A stretch of 64,000 nt of DNA from Schmidtea polychroa. Its lineage: Eukaryota. This document shows positions 41,701-63,956 of the stretch, one piece after another. Each line of letters begins with the position of its first letter. The stretch's first letter is position 1. The DNA lies in NCBI GenBank assembly GCA_044892525.1, contig CM097885.1, positions 233,740,001-233,804,000 of the forward strand. Reading direction: 5' to 3'. The notes beneath the pieces are model-generated. The model saw nothing but the letters and a program-made list of their open reading frames with translations, had not been told where the DNA came from and ran no database searches. A program made the translations under genes and the position numbers.

Positions 41701-44700
41701 ACAGCCATTAAACTATGAATTTTTTTATATACCTTACTGTAAATGTTAAATATAATTCATTACATTTTTAATATATTTACTATTAATATTAGTATCATTT
41801 TCAGCTCCACTTCCATTATCTCAAATTTAATCTTAAATTATTTATAGTTGTAAAAATATCTCATTTAGAAAATAGTTATAAGAGAATATTTAACCTTCAT
41901 CTGAAATTTTTATATCATTGATGTCAACTTGTATTTATAACGAAATTTAAAAGAATCATCTTCTCTTACATCATGGTTTCTCAAAACGGGTTAGGCGTAC
42001 CAACTGGGATACGCGAGTTGCTGCAGCCAAAAATAATATACATATAATTTGACATGACGTGTAATGCTAATTGATGAAGTAATTTATTATTAATAGGTAG
42101 TACCTTCATTTGCATGCATGCTCAGTGAGCATTGCTCACTCTACGTTGTATTTTCTGTAAGCGTTCTCTTATTCACCCATGTGTGTGGGTGTTGCTGTGT
42201 ATGTCTGTAATTCAAAAACATTTCTTTTCTAGCCATTCAGAACCCACCACTCTTTCATCAGTCTTCTTTCAACCCCAACCCATAAGCTTTCCTCACCTGC
42301 TTACATTCCCAATAATTATCTTCGGCCTGTAGAAACATCTAGCATGCACATACTGCTTGTAACGCACACACACCTGACAACCGTTTGCAATGAATAAACG
42401 CATCTATAATCCAGGTTAGTGTATACAACCAATGATAGATGACGAATTATTTGTGATTAAATGGAGTTACTTTGTTTAACTATTTTTTAACTATTTTAGT
42501 CATTTTATAAATGGTTTTCAAGTAATTTGTTTAATCTAAAGTAAAGTTTAAGGGTTGGATTTTGATCCATATAGAAATGAGATCATTATTCAAGCTCTTA
42601 AATATTACTTTTTTTCAACATTTTCTATTATAACTTATCCAATTAATTTTTACAAGATTTTCAGACATTTATTAATAAAAATTTGGATTGATTTCGATAC
42701 AATGTTCTATCTCCAAAGAAATCTATTTTTACAATATTTATGGAAAAGACGATGAAGTGTTCAAAATAGCTTTTCAAACTTTTATAATCATCCTTTTTAG
42801 CTCACTTTCCAGAGCCTCATTGACTAAATCGAATTTCCATTCGAGGACATTAATTTTTAAATTTAGGTTAATAAAATTTACGATTTCCTAGTTTTTTAAC
42901 ATTGGACAGCAAAGTTGATAAAGAAATTTAGGACAATGTGAAATACTAAAAAATTATTAAATTTATTAAAAATTGAAGATAAATCTTACGAAATAATGTT
43001 ATGGTGCGTTTATTCATTACGATTCTATATATCGAAATTTCGCATGCATTTTTTACAATGTGTTGTCTTTGTGCGTGTCAGTTTAATTTTTTACCACTTC
43101 CTATATTAAGTGCGTTTATTCACTGCAACGCAAAAAATCAACACACGTAAGTTTGTGTATTTATATAATATAAACATATTGATTTTTTAACAGTATATAT
43201 GCGTTTATTAATTCCAAATGAGTGTATCTTCTTTAGGCCATATTTAACTGAAACATGTCTATCAAAAGAGCGCGTTACTGCTATTGTATTTTCTTTTTTC
43301 TCTCATTAGTTGAATTAGGCATTGCATATTATATTCCTCCTGTGATGTGAACCTACAGAACCCACAGATTTTCTGTGACCAAGCTAATAAGCAAGTGATG
43401 TGGAAAAAAAACTAAATAAAATTTGATATAATATTTTTATTCTTATTATTTTTATTAATANNNNNNNNNNNNNNNNNNNNNNNNNNNNNNNNNNNNNNNN
43501 NNNNNNNNNNNNNNNNNNNNNNNNNNNNNNNNNNNNNNNNNNNNNNNNNNNNNNNNNNNNNNNNNNNNNNNNNNNNNNNNNNNNNNNNNNNNNNNNNNNN
43601 NNNNNNNNNNNNNNNNNNNNNNNNNNNNNNNNNNNNNNNNNNNNNNNNNNNNNNNNNNNNNNNNNNNNNNNNNNNNNNNNNNNNNNNNNNNNNNNNNNNN
43701 NNNNNNNNNNNNNNNNNNNNNNNNNNNNNNNNNNNNNNTGTGATACCCAGTGCAAATCCCAATAGTAGACTAGTTTCGAGCTTTTGGCTCTCTCTTCACG
43801 CCAGGTAAGTATACAATATTGCTAATTCAACTTTGTTGCATACTTTCCCCGTACCAGGGAATTAATATTTAAATTTAATAGTTTTTAGTATTTCACATTG
43901 TCCTGAAATTTCTTTATCAACTTTGCTGTCCAATGTTTATGTTGGGGAAAAAACTAGGAAATCGTAAATTTTATTAACCTAAATTTAAAAATTAATGTCC
44001 TCGAATGGAAATTCGATTTAGTCAAAGAGGCTCTGGAAAGTGAGCTGAAAAAGATGATTATAAAAAGTTTGGAAAAAAAATTTCATCGTCTTTTCCATAA
44101 ATGTTGTAAAAGTAAATTTCTATGAAGATAAATAAATTAATTTAAAAATAAAATAAAAAAATGGATTTCATTTGATAGCAAAAACGGCAAAACAAATGGG
44201 TAGATAAGAATACACCGCCAGGACTCACATCTAAACCGAGCATTCATGGGAAAAAAGTTATGGTCACTGTATGATGAAATGCCAAATGTGTGATCCTCTA
44301 TTCCTTCAAGACCATTGCCATGAAATTGATGTCATGCATGCGAAACGTATGAAAAAACAACCAGCATTGGTCAATCGGCACGGCGCAATATTACTGCATG
44401 ATAACGCACTGTTGACAAATTAGCCTCACTACAATATGACGTTTGGCAACATCCCCAAATTCACCCGATATTTCTCCTGCCTATTATTACCTGTTTCGTA
44501 ATTATGAGTTATTTTTAAGAGAAAAAAAATATAACAACCAAGACGATGTAATAAAAGACTTTGAATTGTTTATTAATTCTAAAAACGAAGACTTTTTTCA
44601 AAAAGGCATAAACGACTTGCCCAATCGTTGACAGAAAGTTGTAGATGCTGATGGGAATTATTTCAATTGAATAAAATAAAAAATATGAAACATAGAGCTT

Positions 44701-47700
44701 TCTATTTTTTTATTTTTACTCATGCCTTCCAATCTAATATTTGAATTTTATTATTGAAAAATTAAATTTGAAATGTATTTTAAATTATTTAAATTTTTTT
44801 ATGAAACGGATCGAGTAAAAAACAAGAATGATGGAAGAAAAGAACAAGAAATATTAGTTAAATTTCGTAATGGATTGAAACATCATGTATTTCATTTGGT
44901 AAATAAACCTACTGTTCCTTGTACGAATCATGAATATCACTTGAATTTACAATCTGGATTAATTTATCATTCAATGATAGATTTAAAATAATTTTCTCAA
45001 AGAAAAAACTTTTCGAAATGCTTAGTAACACAATTCCAATCAATTCAAAAATCAAACAGTTTAAAATATGTCGACTTTTCAAAATTTTAAACAAAAAATA
45101 TATTTATAACAAATATTTAAAAAATATTAAACTATTTAATTGAACTATGTCACTCTTTGACATATGCGATCTGCAATTAATTAATTAATAATTTTTATTT
45201 AATTTTAATTATTATTTTTATCACTGGAGGGAACAGTAATAGTTAATTAGCAATTCTTGGTTTCCAAGTCCACAAGATTTAAAAACCGATGTTTATTCAA
45301 CCAAATCTCAATATTTAGTATACTTGCAAAAATCGGATAACTGATGTGAAAACTAGAATTTCTGAAAATCAGCTGGTAAAGTATTTATAGAACTACAGAA
45401 TACTACTCTACTTTGTATTACAGTGGCGTAACTAGTGTTTTCAGCGCCTAAAATATTTTCACCCCTTTAATTGCAATTTTTCAAAATTTTTTACATGCAA
45501 ATAATCAAAAGATCAAAGTAAATTTTATGACTCTGTTTTACAATTTATATTGAATTGAAAAAATTAAAGAAATTTAAATTTTACCAATAAATCCATTTTA
45601 AACTATATTTATTCTATAAATTTATAAACAATAAATTTATATACAATGTATTAGTAATGACAACCAACAGGTTGAAAATTAATAAGAACAACAGAAATGT
45701 CTTTCTTTTCCTTTTTACAGATTCTTTCTATCTCATGCAGTTACATAGCTACAGGTATTTTTAATTTTCACTAAATAGAAGGTTTTAATTCAAATAATAT
45801 CAAAATTTTATTTTAAATTGGAAAATTGTTTATATTACAAAAACGAAATGATTATGTAAAAATTCGATAAAATGGCAAGAAATAATTATATGGAAAAATA
45901 AATAGAATGTTTACATAGAGTAGAAAATGATAAATTTGCCTACTTGTCCAAAGAGGCTTCCAATCATATTTGATTCTCAATTTCTTATTTTTTTCATAAC
46001 AAACAAGTTTGTGAATGATACTTAAAGCAATACTAAATGAAAATAAAATAATTGAAAATATAAATTTTAACTTGAATAAATCTGCAGGAAGAGCTTTCAT
46101 TATATGACATGTCATGAATTCTTCTAAAACATCTANNNNNNNNNNNNNNNNNNNNNNNNNNNNNNNNNNNNNNNNNNNNNNNNNNNNNNNNNNNNNNNNN
46201 NNNNNNNNNNNNNNNNNNNNNNNNNNNNNNNNNNNNNNNNNNNNNNNNNNNNNNNNNNNNNNNNNTCTTTACTGATTCATAATCAATTTTTAAATAAATA
46301 CAGTGTCAATTGAAAAGAAATCAGATGTGAAAATCGAAAGTTATTATAATATTATTATTATTAGTTTTATTATTGTTATTATTAATATTAATATAATAAA
46401 ATAATATAATAATTATTATTAAAAATAACGTTAATAATTATTAATAAAAAAATAATAATATTATATAAAATATTTTTTAGTTTATTTAAAGTAGACCTTA
46501 TGTTGAATATCCGAAATTAAAAAAATTCGAGATGTAAAAAAGTTTTAAAAATATATAAATTTGAATATTAATATTAAAAAATAAAATTTTAAAAGCATTT
46601 TAAATTTTGTTAATTTTTTTTTAACGTATCGAGTAAAAGACAAGAATGAGGAAAGAAAAAACAAGAAATATTAGTTGAATTTCGTAATGGAGTGAAAAAT
46701 CATGTATTTTAGTTCGAAATATTTCATTTGGTAAATAAACACTGTGGAAATGGCTTACCTAGTTATTTATTTGAATTATATTAATAATAATAATGATTAT
46801 AAAATAATAGTTTTTGGGTAGCACCATAAATTATCTAATAATCGAAATTTGTTTTATCTAACATATAAAAAAAGTTTATCTTGTCATTTATTTGTTTAAT
46901 AAATAATTAATATAATTATAATAATAGATATTTTAATACATAATTATTATTTAAATAAATTAGAGATATATTCTTATGTTAACAAACAAACAAATTATAA
47001 AATAATGATTTAGTCGTAGCATTAATTAAATGTTAAACAATTAAATAATAAAATAAGATTTTTGCTGCAAAGTATGTATTAAACAAAACAATTTTATAAT
47101 GATAATTATTTTCATAATCGAAAATTATATCATTTCATTTAATATATTTTTTGCAGCAAAAACTTAGTTTATCATTTACTTGTTTAAATCAAACAAATTA
47201 AAATAAAATTCTCCTAGATTTAATTTTTGAAGTTTGTAAATTTCACTTTTTGTATTCATGTTTTAAATTATTTCCATAAAATTATTTGAATTTTGAATCT
47301 TAACAGTTTGTTTTAGAAAATTAGAAATGGCCCAAAAATAATTTAGAAGATTTATAAATAGATTTAGTATAAGAAATCTTGAAGTGTACGGAAAAGATTA
47401 TACCTGTCGTTTTAGTTTAATTTAAAACAATTTAAGTTAATTATTTTAAATTTTTTCGATCAATGAAAACATAAACATGTAAACTTATTTATAAAATAAC
47501 TTGTTATTTATAAATTTGCTAACATACCAATAACACCGCAAACCAATGGTCGAGTTGAATTGTTGTCTTCGTCTGGAACTATTTTCCTGTGTCTCATTGT
47601 CTAAGAACATATTTTCATAAATATTTCCAATGATAAATTTTACAATAAACACAAAATTCTAATAAAAATTTCTTTAAAAATGTAAGTAAATTGTAAAAAG

Positions 47701-48352: not shown

Positions 48353-51300
48353 AATAAATTACAAGTACAAAAAATAAAAAATGGTGAAAAATAGAAAAGT
48401 CAATAATAGTTGAACTGCTATGTCTTGTACTACAAAGTTTAATTGACAATGACTATTTTTTATAACAATTGTTGGTTTATGTTGAAATAATTAGTTAAAT
48501 AATCCGCTGGTTGTGACTGACACATGGAATTACTGACAGCCACTGGAATTTTTGGAATAAATTTTACTAGCAATATATTTTTATTAGAATTGGAGTCGAA
48601 GATAAGAGATTGATAAAATATTTTCTTAGTTTTATACAAGGAAATTATTAATATTTCACAAGTCAATATTATTAAGTAGATAAAAAAATCTAATTTTTAA
48701 TTTAAAATGTAATTTATTTGAAAATGGCTCCAGGAAAATAATTTATTAAATTAAAATTTCAATCAAAATATCAACTCATAAAAACAAGGTGAGTGAAATT
48801 ATTTTTTAAATCATCATCAAAATAAATTAATAATTCGTCCTTTTGCATCTGACGTTTAAATTTGAAACTATTATTTTGTCATATTTTGTAATTTTGTCAC
48901 ATTTCAGGGAAAGTTCAATTATAACTTAAACTCAAGAATAATATATATTAGGAAAATCAGTGTTATCAAATTACACCTTTATAAGAACATTTCATTTGTA
49001 ATAAATATCGCCATACATAAATGTTAAAGTTATATAATAGAAGAGAATATGGAAGAAATATATATCACTAAACAGTGAGTTAATGAGAAAATAATTTATC
49101 CTTCTCTACATATTTCTAACAAAGCCGGGTTTTAGTTCTGTAACTCCTGTAAGTCAATTAGATTCAGCATAAATCGTAACTTAGTTATATAAAATAAAAG
49201 TAGAAGGAAAACGCAATAAATAAATTCATGATTTTAAATAATGATGTAAACAAAAAGTGTATTAAAATTAAAATTTGCATTTCATAACTTGTAAAATTCC
49301 ATTTCCTGTACTTATATGCTCTTGAAGTTCATCATATACAAATTACAGATAATTGGAATAAATTATTTCATATATGACATACTTGTCAAAGAATACAAAG
49401 AAAAATCATGAAAAATTAACTAATTATTTTTAAAATAATATTACAATCAGCCAGTGAAAAATCATTATAAAATGATAGCACAAATTTTAGTAATAAAATA
49501 AAATTTTTAATATTCTCAATATAATCTTAAATAATATTTTATTGTGCCAAATAATTGCTAATTATCGAGTTTCCTTCAAATGTAGAGAAAAAATATTAAT
49601 CAACATTAATTTATTGTTTCTAATTTTTATATTATGACAATGCGTCAACATTCGATATAAAATTAGGTAAATATTCACTATGTTCGCTAAATTTCAAATA
49701 TTCACAATTTTCAAATAATGCAATTAAATGTTACAGAATTGTTATTGGGAAATGATCATTTGACATTTTTTATCAGAATAATTTTGGAAAAAATATATAC
49801 AAAATGTTTCCAGATCATTTTAAAATAAGTCGATAAATTACCTTTCAAATCTTGCATTATGATTGAACAATATTCAAGAAATACAACGACCATATTAATA
49901 GGATCCTCCTGAATGCCATTGGAATCAGGTGTCAATGTTTCAACATTAGAATCATCAAAATAATTATCATTATCTAGAACATTGCGAATGAAATTGACTG
50001 CAGAATTAAGCACAGGGTGGGAAGAAACCATGATATAGCTGAAGTGGACATTTAATTGTAGAAAATCAAAAAATGCCAAAAGAAAACATGAATCAGATCT
50101 AAAAATGAAAATGTTTATAGTAAAAACAATGAAGAAATGAAATCAAACATAGAAAACATGGTTTTTGAAACTCTAAATTTCACTCTCTTAATTTCAAGAT
50201 ATTTAAGATAATTACGTTATCTCTTTAATATGGAGTTAATGAATAGATAAGAATTTATATTGAAATAAGGAAATAACACTAGATTTGACTAGATCAATAT
50301 TTTTAATCAGATAGATCTGAAATTTTGATAGCATGTAGTGTTTTCGGCAACGAATGTACTTGCCAAATTTCAGCTCAATCCGATCAAAGAAAGTAGGTTT
50401 ATTTGGCCTCACAAAATTCGTGTGGCACATACAAACATGCAAACATCATCGAAATTAATATATCGTATTTTCCCGCAAATGGCCCGCATACGCAGATAAC
50501 CCGCACCCTCATATGCCCCTGGATTTTTAAGTTTTGTGTAAAAATTGACCAATATAGTAAAATAACCAAAACGTGTAAAAAGGGTTTGATATATCCCACG
50601 CCCTTATATATATATGGGTTATATGAGTTATATATATGTGGGTTATATGCGGGAAAATACGGTAGAGAGAGTAAAAATATTTAAAATTAAAAATTGTATT
50701 CATATTCATTTTATTTATAATTTATATTCATAATTTTATCTTATTAAATTGTCAAAATGTTCAAAGAAATTGGTAAGACCTCATGCCATTATTTAATTAT
50801 TTTTTGAAAACTCCAAAAAAGGTCTTCGACCATAATCGTCGACAAACTTGTACTGGTCACATCTTTTATTGTCATAATACATAATTTTATTAATTAAAAT
50901 TACCATATTAAAAGTCAATGCGGAAAATTCATGAATATTAAATAAATCGATATATTTACTGATTCATAGTCAAGCTTTTTAATAAATACAATGTCAATGG
51001 AAAAGAAATCAGTGGTGAAATTTGAAGTTAATATAATAAGTTAAATTAAATAATAGTAAATATGTGGCATTGCACTCATGACATAAATATTTATAACCAA
51101 GATCCGAAGACTATTTAAGTAGGATTTGAAATCCACTAACAAACACTAAGTTAAAAAAACAGAAATTAGAAACCACTTTACAATGAGGTGATAATGATCG
51201 ACCAAAGGAATCGATTAATATTAGTAAAAACAATTTTGTGAAAATGTTATTGAAATGCTGTTTGAATTTTTTTTGTGAATTTTGAAAGTTTTAAATTTTT

Positions 51301-54300
51301 ATAACTTTTATAATTTTTAAAGTTTGAATTGAGAAAAGAGAATTTAATGAACTTTTAGCAAAATTATATTTAAAAAAAATTAATGAATTAGTTTGTTTAA
51401 AAAAGAGCAATTTAGATTGATTCAGTTTGAATTAGATGGTGACAGTGCTATAAGTGTGAATTTGAAATAAATAATGATGTCATATTTTAGAAATTTAAAT
51501 TCTATCTAAAATTACCATATTAAAAGGCAATGCCGAAAATTCATGAATATCAAATACATCGAAATATTTCATAGTCAAGCTTTTTAATAAATAACATTTG
51601 TGTTATAAATTATTTTTAATTAATTTTCAGTTTGTTTAGGAATTTTATGAAATTTATTTTATAATTATTTTGATATAATGTAAGTCATATCAATTTTTAA
51701 TTATAATTAAATAATTAAACCAATCGCCAAAAATGTATTTTTCTAAAACAGAAATGCTAATGAATATTTCTTTAAAAATACATTTAAAAACATTTTCAGC
51801 GATCTTTTTTTCTCAAAATTGTCTAAAATAAAGCAATTATAGAAACTTATGTCAGCGGCACATTTCTATATATGGAAAGTTTGCATGTGTTTTTAGTATA
51901 TGTTATGTTTTTGTGCAGTATTTAATTTTTCTACCTCTTTTTAGATTTCTATAGTGTAAGATGTATCTCATTGCATTATCATTGCACTACTCATTAAACA
52001 TCAGCGTGGACTCAAGGTAAGTATGTATGTTTCTATGATGTAAAGCTATTGATTTTTATTGTCATGGATTTAATTAAATATCACTTGGCTATGACAAACA
52101 TTTATTATAGGTAGATTTTATTTATATTATTTATCCTTAAATCCATGTCCATTTAGCAATTATCAATTGCTTTCTGGTTTATTTGAAAACTTATTAGAAA
52201 TTATTATTTGTTTCATTATTATTTAGAATTTTATAATAAAGGAATAATTAATATCGAAATCCAAATGAGTATCATAATGATCGTATTTGAATTAGGATTT
52301 ATAAGTAGGTAGTTAGGGCATCGCCATAACAATTAGCCCCCCCCAGGGGAGGGTAAAATTGTTGAAACTTTTGATTACATTGTTGTGGGTAATTGTTGTG
52401 GTGATGCCCTAACTACCTACTTTTATAATTTGATTTTTTTTCCAAATACTGATAATATTGTTAAATATTAAATATAAATTACAATTTTACATGCTAATAT
52501 TGCAGGTTACTTCTGATTTGATGAGGAAATTACCAATCTAAACATTAAATTTATTAAGTTAATTTTTAAAAATAAAAGAATAAATAATAAAAATAATATT
52601 ATTAATAATTATTAATAATAGTTAATAACAATAATAATAATTAATATATAAATAAACAAATAACGTATATTTGTTTGTCATCAATCAATACAATTATATT
52701 TTTATCGATCTATATATAATTGCAATTCTAATATAAATAGACAAATAATTTTACTTCGGTGAATATTCACAGGTTGCAACTAATAATAATANNNNNNNNN
52801 NNNNNNNNNNNNNNNNNNNNNNNNNNNNNNNNNNNNNNNNNNNNNNNNNNNNNNNNNNNNNNNNNNNNNNNNNNNNNNNNNNNNNNNNNNNNNNNNNNNN
52901 NNNNNNNNNNNNNNNNNNNNNNNNNNNNNNNNNNNNNNNNNNNNNNNNNNNNNNATAATAATAAATACTAACCACAGATGTAATCGATGATATAACTCCT
53001 TTTGGCTTCCGAGAATCTTCTGTGCTTTTTCTAAAACATTTATTGACATTAGAATTTTTAATTTAGAAATTCTTTTTAAGATATTAGGAGGCGGAATATA
53101 TATTAATCGAATGATCTATCATAATAAGTATCCTCTGTATTTAAATAATATACATAAATGGTAGTGAAAATTATTATAATTTACATTTGGAGTGATTTAA
53201 ATGAAATTTGGTGAACATAACTTAAACTATTGCAAATTGGTGTCAATTATTTCATATTTAACCAAAAATAACCTCCAATAAATAAAAACAACTGATAATT
53301 ATTTGCTGTCGGCATATTAAGTAATGAATTCGACCAGTTATTCAAAAAGCAGCACATAAAGATTAATTAATAAATAAAAGATTTTACTTGATATATTCCA
53401 CAAACATCATAGAAATTAAATGAGATATTCCCTAAACAATGAATAAGCTCAATTACAATTAAAATGATAATAATAAGCTAAGTTTAATTTACAATTTTTT
53501 GGAGGAATAACTTTACTTACATTTAAAACGATGTTTTCTTCCAAAATGGACATTTTCAATCGATAGTAATTTGTCTAAAATAAGTTATTTTCAAAAATAT
53601 AATCTAGACAAAATGTTAGATTGATAAAATTTTTACAACTCATTTTTATTTCAGTATTAACCTTTATGCGTAAATGTGCGTTCTTGTGAATTATTATTAT
53701 CTTTCAATAACATCTATAATCTGACTTATTTTTATTCGCCAATGATTTGTTGTAAAATTTTATTTGGACACTTTCGCAGTCTTTCTTAATTTTGTAAAGA
53801 CGAATTAATTTCTGTAATTATCTTTAAAACATAAGCCACTGAATAAATTATTCATTTCTGGAAAAGTGAATATGGTAGATACAATCAGTAGAGTAACAAT
53901 ATTAATAAATTCAATACTATTGTTTTTACATTGTAAAATTAAATAAATTTAAAGAATTTCACTTAGTTTTCGATTACAGATTATTTTTAACTAACTACCA
54001 ACGGTGATAGAATTTGCGAGGTAATCACATTCTGCTTCCTACTAATAATCGAAAAAGAATTAAGCCCATAATGAACTGTTCTGATACAAACAAGATACAG
54101 GAAACATTAGAAAAATTGACTTCAAGGAACTCTTGGTCAATTCTGAGCTTAAAAATTAAAAATTGCTGTTTTTATTCAAAATTTCAAAGATTTACATTTC
54201 CTACCGATTATAGATTAATATTTTGCTCCCTATTCACCATGAATTTTATGCAAAGATTTTTCTGATACAGATCAAAAGTGAAGTTAAAGATTTTTAATGA

Positions 54301-57300
54301 TTATGCTGATTGTGATTTTTACGGTTTCGCTTTTTTTTTGAATAGATTGTTTTCGAAAACATGTTTTATAAAATTATTTAAAATAAATTATGTAAAATAT
54401 TCTAACATTATGTATTTATTCATTTTCAATCTGAATTTAGCACTGATACCTAACATTTGAGTTGATATAATTCTAAATTTAATTTCGCAGTAAATTCACT
54501 TTTAAATTTTGAATTACGCATTCACGCAATCAATATTGTGAATCAGTTCGAAACCTTTGAAGCATATTGTCTCATTGTACAGAACAATGAGGATATAAAT
54601 AGATTTTAAATACAGCAAAATTTTGATTTGTAANNNNNNNNNNNNNNNNNNNNNNNNNNNNNNNNNNNNNNNNNNNNNNNNNNNNNNNNNNNNNNNNNNN
54701 NNNNNNNNNNNNNNNNNNNNNNNNNNNNNNNNNNNNNNNNNNNNNNNNNNNNNNNNNNNNNNNNNNNNNNNNNNNNNNNNNNNNNNNNNNNNNNNNNNNN
54801 NNNNNNNNNNNNNNNNNNNNNNNNNNNNNNNNNNNCACTTGGAAGCAGTTTCTGTGTATAGACGGTGTCTCCAGAGGCGAATATGATTTTTCATACGCCA
54901 TGTTTACAAGTTTGCAGATATTTTTTCTGTTATTTAGCTAATTTGCAAGTGATGTGATTTCCAGTGTACCAGGGAATGTATGCAATAGAGTTGAATCAGC
55001 AATATTGTATACTTACCTGGCGCGAAGAGAAATCTTCGCGTCTCCTGCATAGTACTGATGAGAGCCAAAAGCTCGAAACTAGTCTACTATTGGGATTTGC
55101 ACTGGGTATCACAAATTGTTTATTATTATAGTGTGTGTGTGGAATTATTAAGCCAATTGAATTTAATAATTTCAATCTAATTACAAATTTATAATACCAA
55201 TTTTACCGTATAGCGATTATGCTGCATTAGAATCGTGCTCAAATATAGAGCTTCCATGCCGAGACAATTACGATATGAATAATCTGAGATTATGATAATA
55301 AGAGCTTCAAATATTTCATCTGTCAACATGTATTCGACAAATTTGTTTTCGTTTAATAAATTACAAGCCTGCAATAATAAATGAAATTTCCTAAACTTTA
55401 TTCCAATATAATGAAAATTATTTTTGTAATTGAATAACAAAATATTTTATTGCTCAAAATTAGATGTATTATTACAAGGTTTCAATTTTTATAATAATTT
55501 TCAACAGAATTTCTAAATAACATTGATCATTATTAATTTTGTAACGGCAAAGTAAATGGGGAAATGTAATATACTTGTGTCTATGGACAGATAAATTCTA
55601 CATGTGAAGTTATACTTAATAAAAATTAATTAATTTTAACCAATGTTAACCAATACAATTCAAAAGGTTTTATATTATATGGAAATTATTTGTTTATCCC
55701 ATTTCAGATGACACAAATTTTATAAACAAAATATTAAACCTCCCAGAGAAACTATGACATATGCGTAATGTATCAATATCAGTTAAATTTACCTCATAAA
55801 CAAAATTATTTTCATCAGCGAAGTTATCTTCATCTAAATGACAACCATTCTCAGCAAAAAATTCCTTGTATTCTACAGCATGTAAAATTTGCTTTTTGTA
55901 ATGTGTATCGCAAATATCAAGTTGCAGATCATAATTCAGACAAAGCTGATAAATTACAGGGTATTCCCGCTTATATTTGACCACAATTTTTACAAACATC
56001 AAAGGTGGACGAAAATTTTATGTCAAAACTTGATCTGTAACCAAAGAAACCAAGTTAGATGCCGAATGTGATTCAAACACTCTAACTAAACCAAGATTAA
56101 ATCGTACTTTCTTATCATAATCGTGTAAATTGATGTTTATGAACCTCTTCATACAAATGTTAGTTCATTCGTCCAATGTAATACTGAATCGTTTATTTTG
56201 TTTTAGTTTATCTTGATGCAGGATCATCATTTCTCTTTTTTCATAAAATCATTTTGGACATGCATCATAACACCGGATTCGTCCTTAGGTAAAGTATAAC
56301 CACATTTAAGAACTGATTCCCGAATAAATTTGGATCTAGTGATGGCTCTAATTAATATCCCATCAATGGCTGCTAGTTCAGACACAATATCTTCTAACGT
56401 TTTCTTCGCTGTTGTAGTGTAATCTAATATTGATGTTGTTTGTTTTTCTATTTCAAATTATCTGTATTTTCTTCTTTTATTACAGCAATTCCATGTTTAA
56501 CTTTTAAATGTTTAACCATTGATGATGTATAATGATTCGTATATAACAAAATAGTGCTGGATTTAGTACATTTGCTTGTTTTGAATTGCTAGTTGTTAGT
56601 TCCATGGTAAAACAATTCTAAAATAATAAGTAAGGCCATACTAATTTTAGAAGACTTTAATTTAAAATTTATAATCATTTATATTGAAGTAAATTTTGTT
56701 TAAACAAACTTTTGAAATTTATAGGTGAATTTTGATTATATTTTTGATTAACTTCATGGAAAGTACGCAATATGTTTATTAATAAGTCAAAAACTCCGGT
56801 CGAATTGTGTTCCAATATCGTTTATCAGTTTACATGTAATGGGTGTAATGCCACATACATTGGAGAGACTTCCCGTCATCTCTGTATTCGAGCTCGAGAA
56901 CATTGTAGACCGAAGGCCCATATTAGTGAGCACAATAAGCGTAAATCTATTAGGCTGTAAGATTAAAATAGGTATGTCTGATTTTAAAATTTTATTAAAA
57001 AATTCGATAATTATTGGGAACGTGTATTTGTGAGGCGTTATTGATAAAGTCATTGAATCCGAAAATTAATGTGCAGAATGCAGTGAATACTTGTGTTTTA
57101 AATGTTTTTAAATAATTTTTTTTGTATATTGTATGTATTTATTGTTGTGTGTTAAATTAAATAATTAATAAAATTTTTTAAATTATTAAATTAAATTGTG
57201 AATGATAAAAATTTAAAAATAATATATTAATTTAATTATAATTTTTAAAAATAATTAAATGTTTTTATTAAGTAAAAATTTTTTTTTATAAAATTAATTA

Positions 57301-58660
57301 ATTTGTTTTAAATCCTTAATTTTTATAGTTATTATATCCCATCTGATTATGACAGGAAAACATTCGAAACAGTCGTGAAAAGAATGTTTGATTGGCGTTA
57401 TCTTATAATTAAATCATTGTCATGTATGTTTAACTATATATTTTAAATAGTTTAAAAATTATTCGGTATGAGAAACTCTTCGAATCTTATTTGACAATAA
57501 AGTATTAGTATGCGGTATTTTGTGTGATAAGAGCACAATGTTGAACCGCAGTCTTCTTGATTCTTTTTATCGTTCTTTTTTAAATATATTATTGAAAAGT
57601 TAATATTTAGTTTTCTGCATGCTGCTACTCATTATTTATTACAATATTGTAATATTCTTTGTAAGGAATAAGAAATACAAATATTAGTCTGTGATAAATG
57701 ATATATTAATTTGAAGTTTTATACATGTTTTTATAAGCAAGTGACATCAAAATATATAAATCTAAATCNNNNNNNNNNNNNNNNNNNNNNNNNNNNNNNN
57801 NNNNNNNNNNNNNNNNNNNNNNNNNNNNNNNNNNNNNNNNNNNNNNNNNNNNNNNNNNNNNNNNNNNNNNNNNNNNNNNNNNNNNNNNNNNNNNNNNNNN
57901 NGATTATTATTATAACAAATAGTAATAATAATAGTAATAATATTAATAATAAATGGTAATAATAATAATGTCATGGTTTGATAAAAATCTATATTACTGA
58001 CCGAAGCAAGACTTAATAACAAATTGAGAACAATTGATTTCAATCTATTTGGAGTATTGGTAATCAAAATTTTATGAGCAATTGTAATGATATTCTGAAA
58101 CTTTAAATAAAAATTGCTTTCATAAGGAACGATTCTTACATGCATTGATTCATCTATAAAATCTTTGCCTACAAGAAGATCAATTAAATTTGAAGTTTGA
58201 CCAATGACGGATGTACTAGAAAATACTCCATTTACTAAACATATTATAGTTTGAGAAGCATTGGCTACACGAAAATAATGAGATTGTTTAAAAGCCTCAA
58301 TGCATTTAAGAAACAAACGGTTTATATGAGGCTGATTTACACTTTTTTAAATTAGGTTATTAATAGTAATTTACTTTTAAGCACATAATTTCATCTAGGG
58401 AATGCTTGTCAAATAATTGATTGAAAGCAACAATATTAACCTAAAAAATAAGTAAATTTATTTAATTATCACTTTTAAAAATTACTTTCAATAAAAAAAA
58501 TTCATCCCAGAATTCATCTTTACCTTCTGATATATCAACTCCCTATAATTAATTTTAAATTTCGTTATTTTGATTATATTAATACGTAAAAAAATTGCTC
58601 GTAAATTTTAACAACTTTTTCTTTGTACATGCTTTTAGTATTGCCTTTCACAGATCCCAT
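38793..58660 (-). CDS. ARMH3: Armadillo-like helical domain-containing protein 3 (C10orf76/UPF0668), multi-exon, 3' end not located
   Basis: Hand-spliced GT-AG exons, all phase-compatible: 58660-58586 ([25 protein letters not shown]), 58542-58486 ([10 protein letters not shown]), 58440-58375, 58331-58140 ([10 protein letters not shown]), 58094-58002 ([12 protein letters not shown]), 55368-55207 ([11 protein letters not shown]), 53574-53521, 53431-53388, 53030-52973, 52537-52491, 50098-49842 ([13 protein letters not shown]), 48281-48223 (CRLCFLILL), 48161-48096 ([10 protein letters not shown]), 47600-47528 (MRHRK..RPLVC), 46132-46072, 46032-45944 ([15 protein letters not shown]), 41528-41446, 38919-38793 ([28 protein letters not shown]). 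Motifs are collinear with ARMH3 as I recall it. Confidence 0.92.
39459..39675. mobile_element. hAT-type MITE, 217 bp
   Basis: TIRs CAGGGATGGCAAA / TTTGCCATCCGTG. Perfect 8-bp TSD GTATACAA at 39451-58 and 39676-83. Confidence 0.9.
42130..42400 (-). mobile_element. Possible LINE AP-endonuclease remnant
   Basis: GC-richer patch; [19 protein letters not shown] loosely resembles IIIGDFN..ITNT..HKWTW. Confidence 0.3.
42708..44130. repeat. Long inverted repeat, arms about 255 bp (42708-42965 and 43870-44130)
   Basis: 42820-42890 ATTGACTAAATCGAATTTCCATTCGAGGACATTAATTTTTAAATTTAGGTTAATAAAATTTACGATTTCCTAG is the near-exact reverse complement of 43953-44025. Confidence 0.9.
43739..43860 (-). mobile_element. 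Second copy of the U1-like/hammerhead element with a 31-nt deletion removing the ribozyme core
   Basis: Reverse complement reads ..AATATTGT-ATACTTACCTGGCGTGAAGAG|AGAGCCAAAAGCTCGAAACTAGTCTACTATTGGGATTTGCACTGGGTATCACA. It lacks the equivalent of 55030-55060. Confidence 0.85.
44190..44675 (+). mobile_element. mariner transposase C-terminal remnant
   Basis: [53 protein letters not shown]. Confidence 0.92.
44790..46745 (+). repeat. Pair of ~125-bp direct repeats (44790-44915 and 46612-46745)
   Basis: Shared ATCGAGTAAAA.ACAAGAATGA..AAGAAA..ACAAGAAATATTAGTT.AATTTCGTAATGGA.TGAAA.ATCATGTATTT. Confidence 0.8.
45421..45436 (+). mobile_element. Solo left TIR of the 59.2 kb hAT MITE family
   Basis: CAGTGGCGTAACTAGT identical to 59194-59209; no right end found. 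Confidence 0.6.
50463..50662. mobile_element. pogo/Tigger-like MITE, 200 bp
   Basis: TIRs (T/C)CGTATTTTCCCGCA / TGCGGGAAAATACGG, flanked by TA on both sides. Confidence 0.8.
50897..51595 (+). repeat. Dispersed AT-rich repeat family (copies at ~4474, ~46268, 50897-51010, 51510-51595)
   Basis: Shared motif ATCGATATATTTACTGATTCATAGTCAA..TTTTAATAAATACAATG. Confidence 0.7.
52305..52420. mobile_element. Small MITE with ~32-bp TIRs
   Basis: GTAGGTAGTTAGGGCATCGCCATAACAATTA / TAATTGTTGTGGTGATGCCCTAACTACCTAC. Flanks ATTTATAA and TTTTATAA (7/8 match). Confidence 0.75.
54958..55115 (+). mobile_element. Short retrozyme/SINE-like element: upstream block, U1-like 5' end, GAAA-tetraloop hairpin and hammerhead
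   Basis: ATACTTACCTGGCG at 55009. Hairpin CGCGAAGA-GAAA-TCTTCGCG at 55021-55040. Hammerhead downstream. Homologous copy at 43739-43860 on the minus strand. Confidence 0.7.
55046..55101 (+). ncRNA. Minimal type I hammerhead ribozyme, intact core
   Basis: Stem I ATAGTA (55049-54) pairs with TACTAT (55085-90), extended by TGCA/TGCA. Core CTGATGA 55055-61. Stem II GAGC-caaaa-GCTC. GAAA 55075-78. Two-bp stem III within palindrome ACTAGT. GTC cleavage triplet ends at 55084. Confidence 0.93.
55700..56570 (-). mobile_element. hAT transposase remnant (BED-finger end plus DDE start, internally deleted)
   Basis: [12 protein letters not shown]; [22 protein letters not shown]; [23 protein letters not shown]; EYPVIYQL near the 3' end. 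Confidence 0.72.
56760..57115 (+). mobile_element. Frameshifted Penelope-like GIY-YIG remnant, same family as the 20.7 kb copy
   Basis: [33 protein letters not shown], then frameshifts, ending ..[13 protein letters not shown]. Confidence 0.85.
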
Positions 58661-59850: not shown

Positions 59851-62800
59851 TTAATTTCTTTTTATATTTGGCTCCAGATTTTCGTCGAATCCTTTCAGAA
59901 TAAATTCTCTAGTGCTTCTGTCGCATTTATTAACAAGCATTGTAATTGTCGCAAGCTTCCTTGATAGATTCAGATTCTCATTTCTCACTTCAAATAGATC
60001 ATCTTTCAACTTAGTCATCATTTTTATTTTCTGTTTATAATTTGCATGTCCGCATGAAGTGATCAATTCATCATTTTGCTGGGAACATAAAATAAGTAAA
60101 CTAATGGATTTTTCTGTAACAATTACCAATATTACTTCTTTTAATGCTTGGCGCTGTCCATTTGCCTCGGTTAAGTTCTTTGACAACTCATAGATGTAGT
60201 TATCTTTCACGCAAATTCTATAGATATATATTACTTGTTAATCATATAAACTAGAAGAGCATAGAAAACAACTCGTCATTTTTGTGCCGAGAAAACAATC
60301 TGTAATCTTCTATGTCTTTTTTATAAGATATAATCGCAGCTTCTAAACTTTTAATGTTATCCGAAAATTGCTCCTTTTATAATAAAGGTTAGATTATAAA
60401 TATATATTTATTGGGGAATTTAAATTTACTCTATAGATATTTCCGTTAAATTGAAAATGTTTTCAAGCATCGACTGAAATAAAAAGGAATGGCTCCATCA
60501 ATTTATAATATTTANNNNNNNNNNNNNNNNNNNNNNNNNNNNNNNNNNNNNNNNNNNNNNNNNNNNNNNNNNNNNNNNNNNNNNNNNNNNNNNNNNNNNN
60601 NNNNNNNNNNNNNNNNNNNNNNNNNNNNNNNNNNNNNNNNNNNNNNNNNNNNNNNNNNNNNNNNNNNNNNNNNNNNNNNNNNNNNNNNNNNNNNNNNNNN
60701 NNNNNNNNNNNNNNNNNNNNNNNNNNNNNNNNNNNNNNNNNNNNNNNNNNNNNNNAATAAAAATAATAATGATAATAATAATAATATTAATAAAGAATAA
60801 TAAAAATAATAATGATGATTAATAATAATAATATTAATAATAATAAATAATAAAAACNNNNNNNNNNNNNNNNNNNNNNNNNNNNNNNNNNNNNNNNNNN
60901 NNNNNNNNNNNNNNNNNNNNNNNNNNNNNNNNNNNNNNNNNNNNNNNNNNNNNNNNNNNNNNNNNNNNNNNNNNNNNNNNNNNNNNNNNNNNNNNNNNNN
61001 NNNNNNNNNNNNNNNNNNNNNNNNNNNNNAAAAATAATAATGATGTTTAATATANNNNNNNNNNNNNNNNNNNNNNNNNNNNNNNNNNNNNNNNNNNNNN
61101 NNNNNNNNNNNNNNNNNNNNNNNNNNNNNNNNNNNNNNNNNNNNNNNNNNNNNNNNNNNNNNNNNNNNNNNNNNNNNNNNNNNGAAAAAAAATATTAAAA
61201 TTAATAATATAATAACAGATCATAAATATTAATTTTATATTATTAATAAAAACAATAAAAATAAAAAAATATCAATAATAATAATAAATATGAATTTCAA
61301 ATTTATTATTAAAAACAATAATACATTTTATAATAATTAATAAGGTAATAATAGATAATAATCAAAATAATAAAATAACAATACTGTTACTTACTTTAAT
61401 TTCAGCATATTTTCCCTTTTCTCTTTGTAGTTCCTTTTCAAGTTGTTCACTAGTTGTCAATAATTCCTCTAGAAGTGAATTTCGTTCATTCCGATTTAAA
61501 TTCTTTTTGTTAATGGGACTCATCGCTCTTGTTGGTATTGGCATCATAGCATTTTGATTAGATTTGAAATTTTCCAATTCCTTATTAGTTTCATTCAATT
61601 CTGATTGCAATTTGCTAAACTCAATACGATAAGTCTCATTGAGCCCATCACTTATTTCACATTTTGCCATCAATTCCGTGATCTATAGAGATTATATTAT
61701 ACAATTGCCATTGAGAGGAAAATAAATTACTCTGTTATTATATTTCAAATTGATTTCATCCATTTTCTTATGATGCGACTATTCAATGTTTCTTTACTAC
61801 CTTTCAATTCTTCTATTTCGTTTTGAGCATTAATTAATCGTTTTTCTAAATCGAAAATCTGATCAACATATTCTGATTCGCTAGCCTAAAATTCCCGATA
61901 TAAAAAGTTATGATGGGAAAACAAAATAAAAAGATGCTAAACTTTAAGTTCCGAAATCAATTCATTGCTCTCCGACAGCTCTTCAATCAATTTGAACATT
62001 TCCTACAAATCGAAACCAAGAATTAAGCTGCTCATCGAACAAGAACAATATCCCTACTTCACTGTTGCATTTCATATCGTCATCCAAATCTTCCTTGGTT
62101 ATTACTGAAAAGCTTTGCTGAGATGAAGTTGAAACTGGACTCCGTAAAAATTCCCTCTCCAATAAATCCAATGAACTCTTAACGACTTCCAATTCATCTT
62201 TATAATAATCCTTTTCCAATAAAGCATCTTCCAGCTCCGATTTCAACTCAGACACCTGAATGCAATTATATCGACATGAATTCACATTTGATCACTATTC
62301 AAATCGTTATATACTTTTTCATTTAAATTATTGGATAATTTTTCTTTTTCTCCATTGATTTCTTTTAACTGAGTTTCTAATTTCTTTATCAAGTCGCGAC
62401 TTTCTCGCAATTCAAAATCAATACCATTATACTTTTCTTTCAGTGCTATATTTGGAAAATAAGTATAAAATAGATGTGTTACAGTGATTATACCGTTGAG
62501 ATTACATTCCAATGCTTCCTGGTCTTTGAGAGAAATTTTCAATTCGTTAATGTCCTTATAATAATGTCAGTAAATGTTTAGATAAAAGGAAAACTATAAA
62601 TTAACTTTTAAATGCTCCTTAACATTATATTCCAATAGACCAATCGTTTTTTGGTATAAGTTATTTTTCGTTTGTGCTTCTTTTAAATCATTATTTAACA
62701 TTTCAATTTCCTGCAATTTATAAATAGTTTACAGTGGGAATAGCAATAGAAATCTACAGATTCTGGCACGGATTTAAATTCATCAAACGAATCGCTCGTT

Positions 62801-63956
62801 TCACTGAGATCCGGTAAATCATTGGGTTTATTAGTATTATTATTATTATTTCTTAGGCCACGTTTCATATATTTCGATGATTTCAATGGATATGAAGGTT
62901 TGGATTTGATGTAATTGAATAGTGTTTGCCGGCGTCGGCTAGCGATATTTTCTTTTTCAATATCATAGTTTTTCAACATTGATTTCATTGAGGCAACTTC
63001 CGATTCTAATTGTCGACGTTCGTCTTTGTAGCTCATTTTAAGTGACATGAATTTCTTGTGCAACTGTTGAAATATATTATTCATTTATCGTTCAATCGCA
63101 ATTAAAATTGTATAAGCAATTGAAACAGATATTAATTATAAAATACAAATAATTGGCTATCAGTTGCTTTCAGACAATCGCGACCTCATTAGTATGGTTG
63201 CCAAGGGAATAATAATGTTCAGGTCAAGCGTAGTATCGAAACCCATGGAACACTAATGGGAACCTTCGACAAAAAACGTTTGAGAATCTTTTTATTTAAT
63301 GTTTAAAAATAATCAATATTAATTTCTTTGAATTATTAAGGAATCCATGGAAACCTTTATATGATTGTTCCATTGGTTATCAATGACTATTAAACAATCG
63401 CGACCTCATTAGTATGGTTGCCAAGGGAATAATAATGTTCAGGTCAAGAGTAATACCAAAAATCTGTGAAACACCAAGGGGAACCTTGGACTAAAAAAAA
63501 CGATTCATAATCCTTGTTTTAAATATTTTTTTAAATCAATATTAATTGCCCTGATCCCTGATTTTGATAGAGTTCATATATTTACCTGGCTTATTGTACT
63601 ATTGGCTTCTGTTAATTCTTCCTGGAGCTTTGATATTTCTAATTGGTTCGGGGTCGGAAATAAGGCTTGATTACTTAACTCGCCAGCTAAACAGAACATT
63701 ATCGATTATTGTGACTAAATATATAATTGTTATAATTATCACATTCTATAATGTCATTGAATTCCTTATAGAGAGAAGAAACTATAGACGCCTCTGGCAT
63801 GGTTAGAGATGAGATAGATCTCATTTCATGGAGTTCCAGCCGAAGGCTGCTGATTTCCGATTGGTAGGAGTCCATTTTGACCCGGTCTGTGTTAATGGTC
63901 ACTTCATTTTGCAGCTTGGATAGTAAGTTATCCAGTAAATCTTTAACGTTCTCTTC
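59851..63956 (-). CDS. Long coiled-coil protein, 3' portion of a multi-exon gene (5' end probably beyond the window)
   Basis: Exons 63956-63743, 63686-63586, 63063-62758, 62710-62606, 62554-62494, 62445-62315, 62255-62058, 62002-61943, 61885-61731, 61682-61395, 60373-60273, 60217-60136, 60078-59851 (TAA). All introns are GT-AG, mostly 47-59 nt. Phases match except exon 61885-61731 (155 nt, 1 nt short). Heptad-rich E/K/L sequence. Confidence 0.82.
63175..63500. repeat. Tandem duplication with 220-bp period inside an intron
   Basis: CAATCGCGACCTCATTAGTATGGTTGCCAAGGGAATAATAATGTTCAGGTCAAG is identical at 63175 and 63395, then diverges. Confidence 0.9.

What the first reader, a model, noticed from the sequence alone, without database searches (positions are those of the whole stretch)
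54958..55115. U1 snRNA 5' end joined to an intact minimal hammerhead ribozyme in a dispersed short element
Seen: ATACTTACCTGGCG (55009) runs into a 10-bp GAAA-tetraloop hairpin and then a complete type I hammerhead (CTGATGA, GAAA, GTC cleavage triplet, two-bp stem III in palindrome ACTAGT). A second copy lies at 43739-43860. Known: U1 begins AUACUUACCUGG, and I recall GCG/GCGU following in insect U1, so the match extends past the 11 nt a splice donor would explain. Minimal palindromic-stem-III hammerheads are described in Penelope-like elements and metazoan retrozymes, where they work as dimers. Newt satellite 2 hammerheads use an snRNA-type promoter. Inference: a non-autonomous retrozyme/SINE that borrowed a U1 promoter and 5' end, probably mobilised by the PLEs in this window. 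Self-cleavage would release a defined ~76-nt RNA (55009-55084) carrying the splice-site-recognition sequence. I do not know of a described U1-head plus hammerhead element.
Basis: partly seen in the sequence, partly recalled or inferred. Interest (0 to 1): 0.9.

Follow-up and report, generated by a model that had tools for sequence, protein, structure and literature searches.

The report
Solo hammerhead repeat with U1-like motif
A 162-base repeat carrying a complete animal-type hammerhead ribozyme is really there, but it looks like a stray single unit of an already known kind of ribozyme-bearing retroelement, and its 13-base likeness to the start of U1 snRNA lies inside a hairpin in the middle of the unit, not at the head of a U1-derived RNA.

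Summary
The letters are as described. At 55009 a 13-14-nt match to the U1 5' end is followed by a GAAA hairpin. Next comes a complete type I hammerhead, with its first box at 55055-61, a 4-bp helix II, a palindromic helix III and cleavage after 55084. The ribozyme is beyond chance: Rfam HH9 gives E 0.0012 locally, though below the family threshold, and my descriptor hit 0 of 300 shuffles.

The second copy lies on the opposite strand and has one 31-nt deletion, so its ribozyme core is incomplete. Only two copies are visible, neither in tandem, and seven scans of three public contig collections plus one protein-collection search found no others.

The unit is about 162 nt (54952-55113). The U1-like stretch is internal (unit positions 58-71) and forms the 3' arm of a 19-bp imperfect palindrome. 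It matches U1 only 2 nt beyond what the complement of an ideal 5' splice site would give. Rfam U1 finds nothing in copy 1 and 9.4 bits in copy 2, against a threshold of 69.5.

The best reading is a solo unit of a retrozyme-like element that depends on Penelope-like elements. A U1-derived head, a borrowed U1 promoter and a released 76-nt RNA are not supported. The origin of the motif stays open.

The parts
54952..55113 (+). Repeat unit E, copy 1 (162 nt, GC 43% in flanks of 26%). The 5' limit is good to about 10 nt. The 3' limit is taken from the end of the outer stem and the end of readable homology.
   Evidence: The plus-strand RNA fold is -69.5 kcal/mol, z -8.8. The minus strand gives -52.1, z -5.3.
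54953..54973 (+). 5' arm of the outer stem. It pairs with 55098-55113 and so closes the whole unit.
   Evidence: The arm is not kept in copy 2, where all six changes break pairs.
54969..55020 (+). Hairpin A, an imperfect palindrome. The left arm (54969-54987) equals the reverse complement of the right arm (55003-55020) at 16 of 18 positions plus one indel.
   Evidence: nhmmer self-reverse match.
55009..55022 (+). U1-5'-end-like stretch. Thirteen bases are identical to the Rfam U1 consensus start. Its reverse complement is an ideal 5' splice site on the minus strand (exon end 55017, intron start 55016).
   Evidence: It is identical in both copies. In the fold, 9 of its first 12 bases are paired.
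55019..55042 (+). Hairpin B, 8-10 bp with a GAAA loop.
55043..55095 (+). Type I hammerhead ribozyme of canonical metazoan form: extended helix I, first box 55055-61, helix II/loop 2 at 55062-74, GAA 55075-77, palindromic helix III 55078-83, cleavage after 55084.
55098..55113 (+). 3' arm of the outer stem and the AC-rich 3' end of the unit, 29 nt after the cleavage site. It is followed by AT-rich DNA.
43739..43869 (-). Repeat unit E, copy 2. It is inverted relative to copy 1, has one internal 31-nt deletion (ribozyme core incomplete) and a diverged 5' end. Its 3' end abuts an N run, so what follows cannot be read.
54923..54956 (+). Segment X, directly upstream of copy 1. It is 82% identical to 43369-43402 on the same strand. 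It may be a PLE-type 'tail' or part of a longer unit.
43369..43402 (+). Second copy of segment X, about 330 nt from copy 2 on the far side of the N run.

Best explanation
E is a solo (single-unit) copy of a short non-autonomous retroelement of the hammerhead-bearing kind, that is, animal non-LTR retrozymes or derivatives of the terminal repeats of Penelope-like elements (PLEs).

Shown:
- It is a discrete unit of about 162 nt, present twice in opposite orientations.
- Its plus-strand RNA is predicted to fold into a closed four-branch structure: an outer stem, hairpin A, hairpin B and the hammerhead.
- The hammerhead is the canonical metazoan type I form.

Inferred:
- Family members are transcribed as multimers or read-through RNAs.
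- Two hammerheads pair through their six-base palindromes to cleave.
- A PLE reverse transcriptase/endonuclease copies the RNA into AT-rich DNA, starting at the AC-rich end of the outer stem.
- A lone genomic unit such as copy 1 is then an inert offspring. Copy 2 is a decayed one.

The U1-like 13-mer is one arm of the internal palindrome, hairpin A. It is not a U1-gene-derived head and does not mark a transcript start. Read on the other strand it is an ideal 5' splice site, and that or the palindrome itself is the likelier source of the resemblance.
For: Ribozyme:
- It is real and complete.
- A 6-bp helix I, a 4-bp helix II, a loop 2 like the Rfam HH9 consensus and a 2-bp helix III with a 2-nt palindromic loop match the 'canonical' metazoan form. 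That form is described for tandem repeats and retrozymes (PMC4209133, PMC7229834).
- The window's own PLE remnant and metagenomic PLE relatives carry the other, minimal form: a 6-bp helix II with a bulge and an AT-only palindrome.

Unit:
- Its length lies inside the reported ranges of 150-450 bp (PMC7229834) and 51-972 bp (bioRxiv 10.64898/2026.07.22.740005).
- The fold is extreme (z -8.8) and 17 kcal/mol better on the ribozyme strand, with 7 G-U pairs. This fits the 'highly self-paired' retrozyme RNAs.
- Dispersed monomers are reported as common offspring of retrozymes (bioRxiv 10.64898/2026.07.22.740005).
- PLE endonuclease remnants are in the same window.

Ends and divergence:
- The AC-rich 3' end sits at the tip of a stem and is joined to AT-rich DNA. 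This fits the rule found for an Anolis PLE: cleavage at an AT-rich site, then reverse transcription starting in an AC-rich stem-loop downstream of the hammerhead (PMC11167929).
- The two copies show 0 mismatches in 68 bases of the 3' part against 11 in 56 of the 5' part. This is as expected if the 3' end is what the enzyme recognises and 5' ends vary.

Against a U1 origin:
- The motif is at unit positions 58-71 and is paired in the fold.
- Rfam U1 gives nothing for copy 1 and 9.4 bits for copy 2.
- Real host donors in this window give the same kind of antisense match.
Against: - There are only two copies, one of them decayed, so there is no covariation test. The changes in copy 2 break the outer stem.
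- No tandem array is seen in readable sequence, and tandem arrays define retrozymes.
- No target-site duplication could be read.
- E has no sequence likeness to any PLE terminal region available to me.
- No further copy turned up in any searchable collection.
- A perfect 13-mer is very unlikely by chance in a 162-nt unit, so 'no meaning at all' is not a comfortable reading. My account leaves its origin open.
- The 3'-end rule rests on one junction.
Confidence: 0.55

Rival explanations
1. E is a SINE or retrozyme that took the promoter and 5' end of a U1 gene. Transcripts start at 55009, and self-cleavage after 55084 releases a 76-nt RNA headed by the splice-site-recognition sequence.
For: - The 13-mer is identical to the Rfam U1 start and far beyond chance for one unit.
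- It is kept without change in both copies.
- snRNA-headed SINEs exist (PMC4494074).
- The literature searches found no described element that combines a U1-like head with a hammerhead, so it would be new.
Against: - The motif is internal: about 40-57 nt upstream of it belong to the repeat.
- Nothing else in E resembles U1.
- The match goes only 2 nt past what a splice-donor complement explains.
- The motif is paired in both folds.
- snRNA promoters are external and would not be copied through RNA (PMC4494074).
- The stretch 41-61 nt upstream of 55009 is the least conserved part of the unit.
- A lone hammerhead with a loopless helix III is not expected to cleave well (PMC4209133, PMC7229834).
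Confidence: 0.07
2. The motif is the antisense of a real or captured splice donor. The minus strand of E carries an ideal 5' splice site, taken up from a host exon-intron junction or used when E is transcribed antisense. The U1 likeness is its mirror image.
For: - The reverse complement of 55009-55019 is the exact complement of the U1 5' end, which is an ideal donor.
- Two other near-matches in the window are the antisense of evident host donors. One bounds a clean exon of the minus-strand coiled-coil gene.
- Possible acceptors and an ATG-led open frame lie 80-115 nt downstream on the minus strand of copy 1.
- PLEs are known to keep introns and to carry host introns (PMC8557442).
Against: - The ribozyme, and the better fold, are on the other strand.
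- The downstream minus-strand sequence is not shared by copy 2, so any splicing there is local.
- No transcript data are available.
- This reading explains the origin of the motif, not what the element is, so it can coexist with the best explanation.
Confidence: 0.25
3. E is a fragment of a Penelope-type terminal repeat with a sense-strand mini-intron. The intron would run from a GT at 54978 to an AG at 55052 (75 nt) and end two bases before the first catalytic box. The U1-like stretch would then be its branch-site region, paired with the donor region in hairpin A.
For: - In Drosophila virilis Penelope a 75-bp intron lies in the terminal repeat, 46 bp after the transcript start (PMC2377424).
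- The 3' end of that intron maps to the 5' end of hammerhead helix I (PMC4209133).
- Here the candidate is also 75 nt. It has a pyrimidine-rich run before its AG and a branch-like stretch about 37 nt upstream of the AG.
- The GT-side hexamer is kept in copy 2.
Against: - The candidate donor is weak.
- A branch site needs about 5 bases and cannot explain 13 perfect ones.
- The equal length of 75 may be coincidence.
- I could not obtain the Drosophila sequence to compare.
- E's hammerhead is the canonical type, not the variant described for Penelope (PMC4209133).
- No PLE body adjoins either copy.
Confidence: 0.1
4. E is a small DNA transposon (MITE or foldback) whose ends are a 14-bp imperfect terminal inverted repeat. 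On this view the ribozyme motif is a passenger or a coincidence.
For: - Bases 54953-54966 and 55100-55113 are inverted repeats with 13 of 14 pairs.
- The whole unit is built of nested palindromes.
- Copy 2 lies at the inner edge of a 230-bp inverted repeat.
Against: - No target duplication is seen at copy 1.
- The 5' repeat arm is not kept in copy 2, although the 3' 54 bases are identical. That asymmetry is typical of retroelements.
- G-U pairs favour one RNA strand by 17 kcal/mol.
- A complete hammerhead is not expected by chance.
Confidence: 0.06

Closest known systems
Animal non-LTR retrozymes (short repeats with type I hammerheads, expressed as small circular and linear RNAs; PMC7229834; bioRxiv 10.64898/2026.07.22.740005)
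   Same: - Canonical type I hammerhead with a 6-bp helix I, a 4-bp helix II and a tiny palindromic helix III that needs a partner copy.
- Unit length within the reported range.
- A strongly self-paired predicted RNA.
- PLEs in the same genome.
- Dispersed monomers are described for these families.
   Different: - No tandem copy is visible at either locus.
- At 162 nt the unit is at the short end of the range.
- It carries an internal 13-nt identity to the U1 5' end, which the papers I read do not describe.
- Expression and circularity are untested.
Hammerheads in the terminal repeats (pLTRs) of Penelope-like elements (PMC4209133, PMC8557442, PMC11167929)
   Same: - A hammerhead with palindromic helix III next to the element boundary.
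- An AC-rich 3' end joined to AT-rich DNA.
- A possible 30-40-nt 'tail' (segment X).
- A possible 75-nt intron ending at helix I, as in D. virilis Penelope.
   Different: - No reverse transcriptase or endonuclease sequence adjoins either copy.
- The PLE remnants in the window and their metagenomic relatives carry the minimal hammerhead form, not this one.
- E has no sequence likeness to them.
SINEU, SINEs with U1- or U2-derived heads (PMC4494074)
   Same: It is a short non-coding retroelement containing sequence identical to part of U1.
   Different: - SINEU heads are long U1 or U2 segments placed at the 5' end and have poly(A) tails.
- Here only 13 nt match, they are internal, and there is no poly(A) tail.
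- SINEU elements have no ribozyme.
Newt satellite 2 and Schistosoma Sm-alpha hammerhead repeats (PMC6155905)
   Same: They are repeats with type I hammerheads that work best as dimers or with an extended helix I.
   Different: - Those are tandem satellites or SINE-like arrays.
I did not verify it in the papers read, and I could not test any promoter here.

Membership tests
Hammerhead ribozyme, type I | Complete catalytic core: both conserved boxes, the 15.1-16.1 pair and a non-G base at the cleavage site. | tested here: met
   all core positions are present in copy 1. Copy 2 lacks part of the core.
Hammerhead ribozyme, type I | Three helices around the core, with helix I open-ended. | tested here: met
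   Helix I has 6 bp plus an extension and helix II has 4 bp. Helix III is a six-base self-complementary run with no loop, so it can form fully only between two copies (read directly from the sequence).
Hammerhead ribozyme, type I | Rfam family score at or above the curated threshold. | tested here: not met
   HH9 scores 23.9 bits against a threshold of 52, and there is no hit in the threshold scan. The shortfall comes from the missing helix III loop and the outer part of helix I in that model.
Hammerhead ribozyme, type I | Self-cleavage. | not testable with these tools
   No RNA data are available.
Animal non-LTR retrozyme | Canonical type I hammerhead inside a short, non-coding repeat of moderate to low GC (150-450 bp). 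| tested here: met
   162 nt and 43% GC, with no meaningful open frame.
Animal non-LTR retrozyme | Head-to-tail tandem copies (dimers to multimers). | tested here: not met
   There is no tandem copy in readable sequence. The 3' side of copy 2 is an N run and cannot be judged. Monomer offspring are described for such families (bioRxiv 10.64898/2026.07.22.740005).
Animal non-LTR retrozyme | Expression as small, highly self-paired circular or linear RNAs. | tested here: inconclusive
   Only the fold could be tested: z -8.8 on the ribozyme strand. Expression could not be tested.
Penelope-like element terminal repeat | Lies at the end of, or next to, an RT plus GIY-YIG open frame on the same strand. 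| tested here: not met
   No RT or endonuclease similarity lies within 1.5 kb of either copy, even at E up to 5.
Penelope-like element terminal repeat | Sequence likeness to the terminal region of a PLE of the same genome. | tested here: not met
   Local alignment to the regions after the two endonuclease remnants and to four metagenomic PLE ends scores no better than shuffles. Full-length PLEs of this genome were not available.
U1 snRNA or U1-derived head (SINEU-like) | Similarity to U1 beyond the 5' single-stranded end (stem-loops, Sm site). | tested here: not met
   Rfam RF00003 gives no hit at E up to 10 in copy 1 and 9.4 bits against a threshold of 69.5 in copy 2. Only the first 13 bases and a 7-base loop-like run are aligned.
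U1 snRNA or U1-derived head (SINEU-like) | The snRNA-derived part forms the 5' end of the unit. | tested here: not met
   The motif occupies unit positions 58-71.
U1 snRNA or U1-derived head (SINEU-like) | Identity with the host's own U1 beyond position 11, and a shared upstream promoter. | not testable with these tools
   The host genome is not searchable here and there is no U1 gene in the window.
MITE / foldback DNA transposon | Terminal inverted repeats kept in all copies, plus target-site duplications. | tested here: not met
   The inverted ends are present in copy 1 only, and no duplication is seen.

The most novel reading that the evidence does not exclude
E may belong to a retrozyme-like family whose structured RNA carries a deliberate mimic of the U1 5' end, held in a hairpin against a splice-donor-like arm. 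Such an RNA could base-pair with 5' splice sites. Alternatively, its hairpin could imitate a U1:donor duplex and so engage splicing factors. On the antisense strand it could recruit U1 snRNP. That would link hammerhead retroelements to the splicing machinery in a way not described in the papers I searched.
Probability: 0.07. Interest if true: 0.75.

Novelty: new member of a known kind. Interest (0 to 1): 0.3.

Why it matters
If the ordinary reading holds, this adds one more species-specific family to the many hammerhead-bearing short retroelements of animals. It also gives a tidy example of a lone, probably inert, unit beside a decayed one.

The one feature worth keeping in view is the perfect 13-base U1-end / ideal-donor palindrome arm next to the ribozyme. 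PLEs are already known for keeping an intron that ends at the hammerhead. A family-wide look at this motif could therefore show whether splicing signals and ribozymes are coupled more generally in these elements.

Tried and rejected
Searches for further copies, all empty:
- A pattern joining the U1-like stretch with both hammerhead boxes, in metagenome and viral contigs.
- Exact 20-26-mers from the fully conserved 3' part and from the 5' block, in metagenome, genome and viral contigs.
- The stop-free translation of the unit used as a pseudo-protein against the large protein collection.

Organism identity:
- The HMMR-like exon found no relatives.
- Cluster look-ups of the nearest PLE proteins gave only unnamed metagenome contigs.
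- The host therefore stays unknown, and I could not compare E with its true U1 gene.

Links to PLEs:
- I tested whether copy 1 is the upstream terminal repeat of the plus-strand PLE remnant 1.6 kb downstream. I rejected this because there is no trace of reverse transcriptase between them.
- I tested whether E derives from the PLE family seen in the window. I rejected this because the hammerhead type differs and no alignment beats shuffles.

Other points:
- Sub-threshold Rfam U4 hits lie on the strand opposite the ribozyme in both copies (15.9 and 14.7 bits). I treated them as noise, because unrelated families score the same in the same 464 nt.
- Supplementary data of PMC4209133, which might hold the Drosophila hammerhead and intron sequence, are not held.
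- I did not fold a circular permutation or a dimer of the whole unit. The dimer co-fold of the ribozyme segment alone gave an extended duplex and added nothing.
Full report
**What is there.**
The plus strand at 54952-55113 reads as the finding says.
- A 14-mer at 55009-55022 matches the start of U1.
- A GAAA-capped hairpin follows.
- A complete type I hammerhead comes next. Its first box is at 55055-61. Helix II has 4 bp with a five-base loop. GAA is at 55075-77. Helix III is a six-base self-complementary run with no loop (55078-83). C17 is at 55084. Helix I has 6 bp and is extended by five more pairs past a one-base bulge.

**Is the ribozyme more than chance?**
- Rfam's HH9 model aligns it end to end at 23.9 bits, E 0.0012 for the 464 nt searched.
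- That is far below the curated 52 bits, and the whole-window threshold scan lists nothing.
- A descriptor of my own (core boxes plus helices) finds this site alone in 64 kb. It hit 1% of 300 shuffles in relaxed form and none in strict form.
- I take the ribozyme motif as real.

**The second copy.**
It exists but differs from the description. It lies on the minus strand (43739-43869) and has one 31-nt deletion within the hairpin/ribozyme part, so its core is incomplete. Its 3' end abuts an N run. These are the only two copies in the window, and neither is in tandem in readable sequence.

**Limits of the unit.**
- Relaxed alignment carries the homology from about 54952 to 55113.
- At locus 2 an unrelated 230-bp inverted repeat (42738-42965 / 43870-44100, 88% identical) starts right beside the 5' end of copy 2. 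This fixes that end to within about 10 nt.
- The U1-like stretch is therefore internal, at unit positions 58-71.
- The unit has 43% GC in flanks of 26%.

**Fold.**
- The plus-strand RNA folds to -69.5 kcal/mol (z -8.8). The minus strand gives -52.1 (z -5.3). The difference comes largely from 7 G-U pairs.
- The predicted structure has four branches: an outer stem joining the two ends, hairpin A, hairpin B and the hammerhead region.
- Hairpin A is an imperfect palindrome. Its left arm equals the reverse complement of the right arm at 16 of 18 positions plus one indel. The right arm is the U1-like stretch.
- Nine of the first twelve U1-like bases are paired.
- Copy 2 gives no covariation support. 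Its changes break the outer stem, and two of three changes in hairpin A keep a pair through a wobble.

**Is it U1?**
- The Rfam U1 consensus printed begins with the same 13 bases. After that the alignment collapses. Copy 2 scores 9.4 bits against a threshold of 69.5, and copy 1 gives no U1 hit at E up to 10.
- The complement of an ideal 5' splice site already accounts for 11 of the 13 bases. The extra two have a 1-in-16 chance.
- Two other near-matches to the 14-mer in the window are the antisense of evident host splice donors. One bounds a clean exon of the minus-strand coiled-coil gene.
- snRNA promoters lie upstream of the transcribed region, and no internal one is known (PMC4494074).
- The bases 41-61 nt upstream of 55009 are the least conserved part of the unit, with 7 mismatches in 19.
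- I conclude that a U1-derived head, a borrowed U1 promoter and a defined 76-nt RNA are not supported.
- Still, a perfect 13-mer is far too unlikely to be pure chance in one 162-nt unit. Its origin is open: an antisense ideal donor, a U1 mimic, or a by-product of the palindrome.

**What kind of element is it?**
- The hammerhead has the 'canonical' metazoan architecture: a 6-bp helix I, a 4-bp helix II and a 1-2-bp helix III with a tiny palindromic loop. This form is described for tandem repeats and non-LTR retrozymes (PMC4209133, PMC7229834).
- The window also holds two old fragments of Penelope-like elements (PLEs). They consist only of the GIY-YIG endonuclease part, at 20697-21197 (minus) and 56703-57112 (plus), and are about 74% identical to each other.
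  - The minus-strand fragment is open over the matched 165 codons.
  - The plus-strand fragment has six in-frame stops and at least one frameshift.
  - Neither has any detectable reverse-transcriptase part.
- About 310 nt after the minus-strand fragment lies a hammerhead of the other, 'minimal' PLE type, with a 6-bp helix II, a bulge and an AT-only palindrome. It resembles those I found beside related PLE genes on metagenomic contigs L004 and L007.
- E shows no sequence likeness to any of these regions.
- E is therefore not a piece of the PLEs visible here. It fits best as a solo unit of a retrozyme-like family. Such families are reported to derive from PLE terminal repeats and to leave dispersed monomers (bioRxiv 10.64898/2026.07.22.740005).

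**How it most likely works (inferred).**
- Family members are transcribed as multimers or read-through RNA.
- Two ribozymes pair through the six-base palindrome and cleave.
- A PLE enzyme copies the RNA into DNA.
- Three small observations fit the rule found for an Anolis PLE, namely cleavage of AT-rich DNA and reverse transcription starting in an AC-rich stem-loop downstream of the hammerhead (PMC11167929).
  - E ends in an AC-rich run at the tip of the outer stem, 29 nt after the cleavage site.
  - That end abuts AT-rich DNA.
  - The 3' 68 aligned bases are identical between the copies, while the 5' 56 differ at 11.
- Segment X is 34-45 nt long. It lies upstream of copy 1 and is repeated at 43369-43402. 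It has the size of the optional PLE 'tail' (PMC8557442), but this is a guess.

**Rivals.**
- A sense-strand 75-nt mini-intron (54978-55052) ending two bases before the first box would mirror D. virilis Penelope (PMC2377424, PMC4209133). It cannot explain 13 perfect bases, and I could not compare sequences.
- A MITE reading rests on the 14-bp inverted ends of copy 1 alone.

**Limits.**
- There are two copies and no transcript data.
- The host is unknown.
- No further copy was found in any collection I could scan.
- Literature searches found no element that combines a U1-like head with a hammerhead.

I did not look up window-encoded proteins in other assemblies, because the flanks returned would show the letters under the N runs.

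- In my private reasoning I twice wrote snRNA sequence from memory (U1 at the start, part of U4 later). I also wrote a few short textbook consensus motifs. I stopped each time and put none of them into a tool call, script, note or conclusion. The U1 and U4 comparisons rest only on Rfam's printed lines.
- One search printed, position by position, where copy 2 differs from copy 1, including the columns of its deletion. If the ribozyme counts as a gene of the element, those were slips. I repeat no such positions here and have deleted nothing.

**Verdict.**

Noticed in passing
window 20691-21386 (-) and 20350-20382 (-): A 5'-truncated remnant of a Penelope-like element. The GIY-YIG endonuclease frame is open over the matched part (Pfam E 0.0047; up to 64% identical to metagenomic PLE proteins). 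A minimal-type hammerhead (6-bp helix II with a bulge, AT-only palindrome, 2-bp helix I) follows about 310 nt later.
   Followed up: yes
window 56703-57112 (+), with a decayed hammerhead-like motif near 57343-57374: A second, older PLE endonuclease remnant, about 74% identical in DNA to the first. It has six in-frame stops and at least one frameshift, and no reverse-transcriptase part. The downstream hammerhead-like motif has a mutated first box and no clear helix II, so it may be chance.
   Followed up: partly
window 42738-42965 and 43870-44100: A 230-bp inverted repeat (88% identical) encloses about 900 nt. The enclosed stretch holds segment X, an N run and copy 2 of the hammerhead unit. It could be a foldback or TIR element, or an inverted PLE-style insertion.
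   Followed up: partly
window 54923-54956 and 43369-43402: A 34-45-nt segment is shared by both loci on the same strand, although the hammerhead unit is inverted at locus 2. It could be a PLE-type tail, a target preference, or part of a longer unit.
   Followed up: partly
window 59854-63700 (-): Exons of a coiled-coil host gene on the minus strand. The last open frame has a weak match to the C-terminal domain of the hyaluronan-mediated motility receptor (Pfam E 0.00016, below threshold). A clean internal exon with acceptor and donor lies near 63590-63690.
   Followed up: partly
window 52011-52024 (+ strand donor): An almost ideal splice donor on the plus strand follows a short GC-richer stretch. 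It is probably the end of an exon of an unidentified plus-strand gene.
   Followed up: no
window 54899-55029 (-) and 43792-43883 (+): Sub-threshold Rfam U4 matches (15.9 and 14.7 bits, threshold 46) lie on the strand opposite the ribozyme in both copies of the unit. Unrelated families score in the same range in the same stretch, so I treated them as noise.
   Followed up: partly
window 63152-63241 / 63372-63461; 44833-44902 / 46650-46719; 50895-50957 / 51507-51569: Three pairs of short direct repeats (63-90 nt, 86-92% identical) of unknown nature.
   Followed up: no
whole window: The DNA is very AT-rich (24% GC outside the N runs), with many (ATT)n and (AT)n runs and 17 N runs of 129-361 nt. 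One N run begins exactly at the 3' end of copy 2, so a tandem continuation there cannot be excluded.
   Followed up: no
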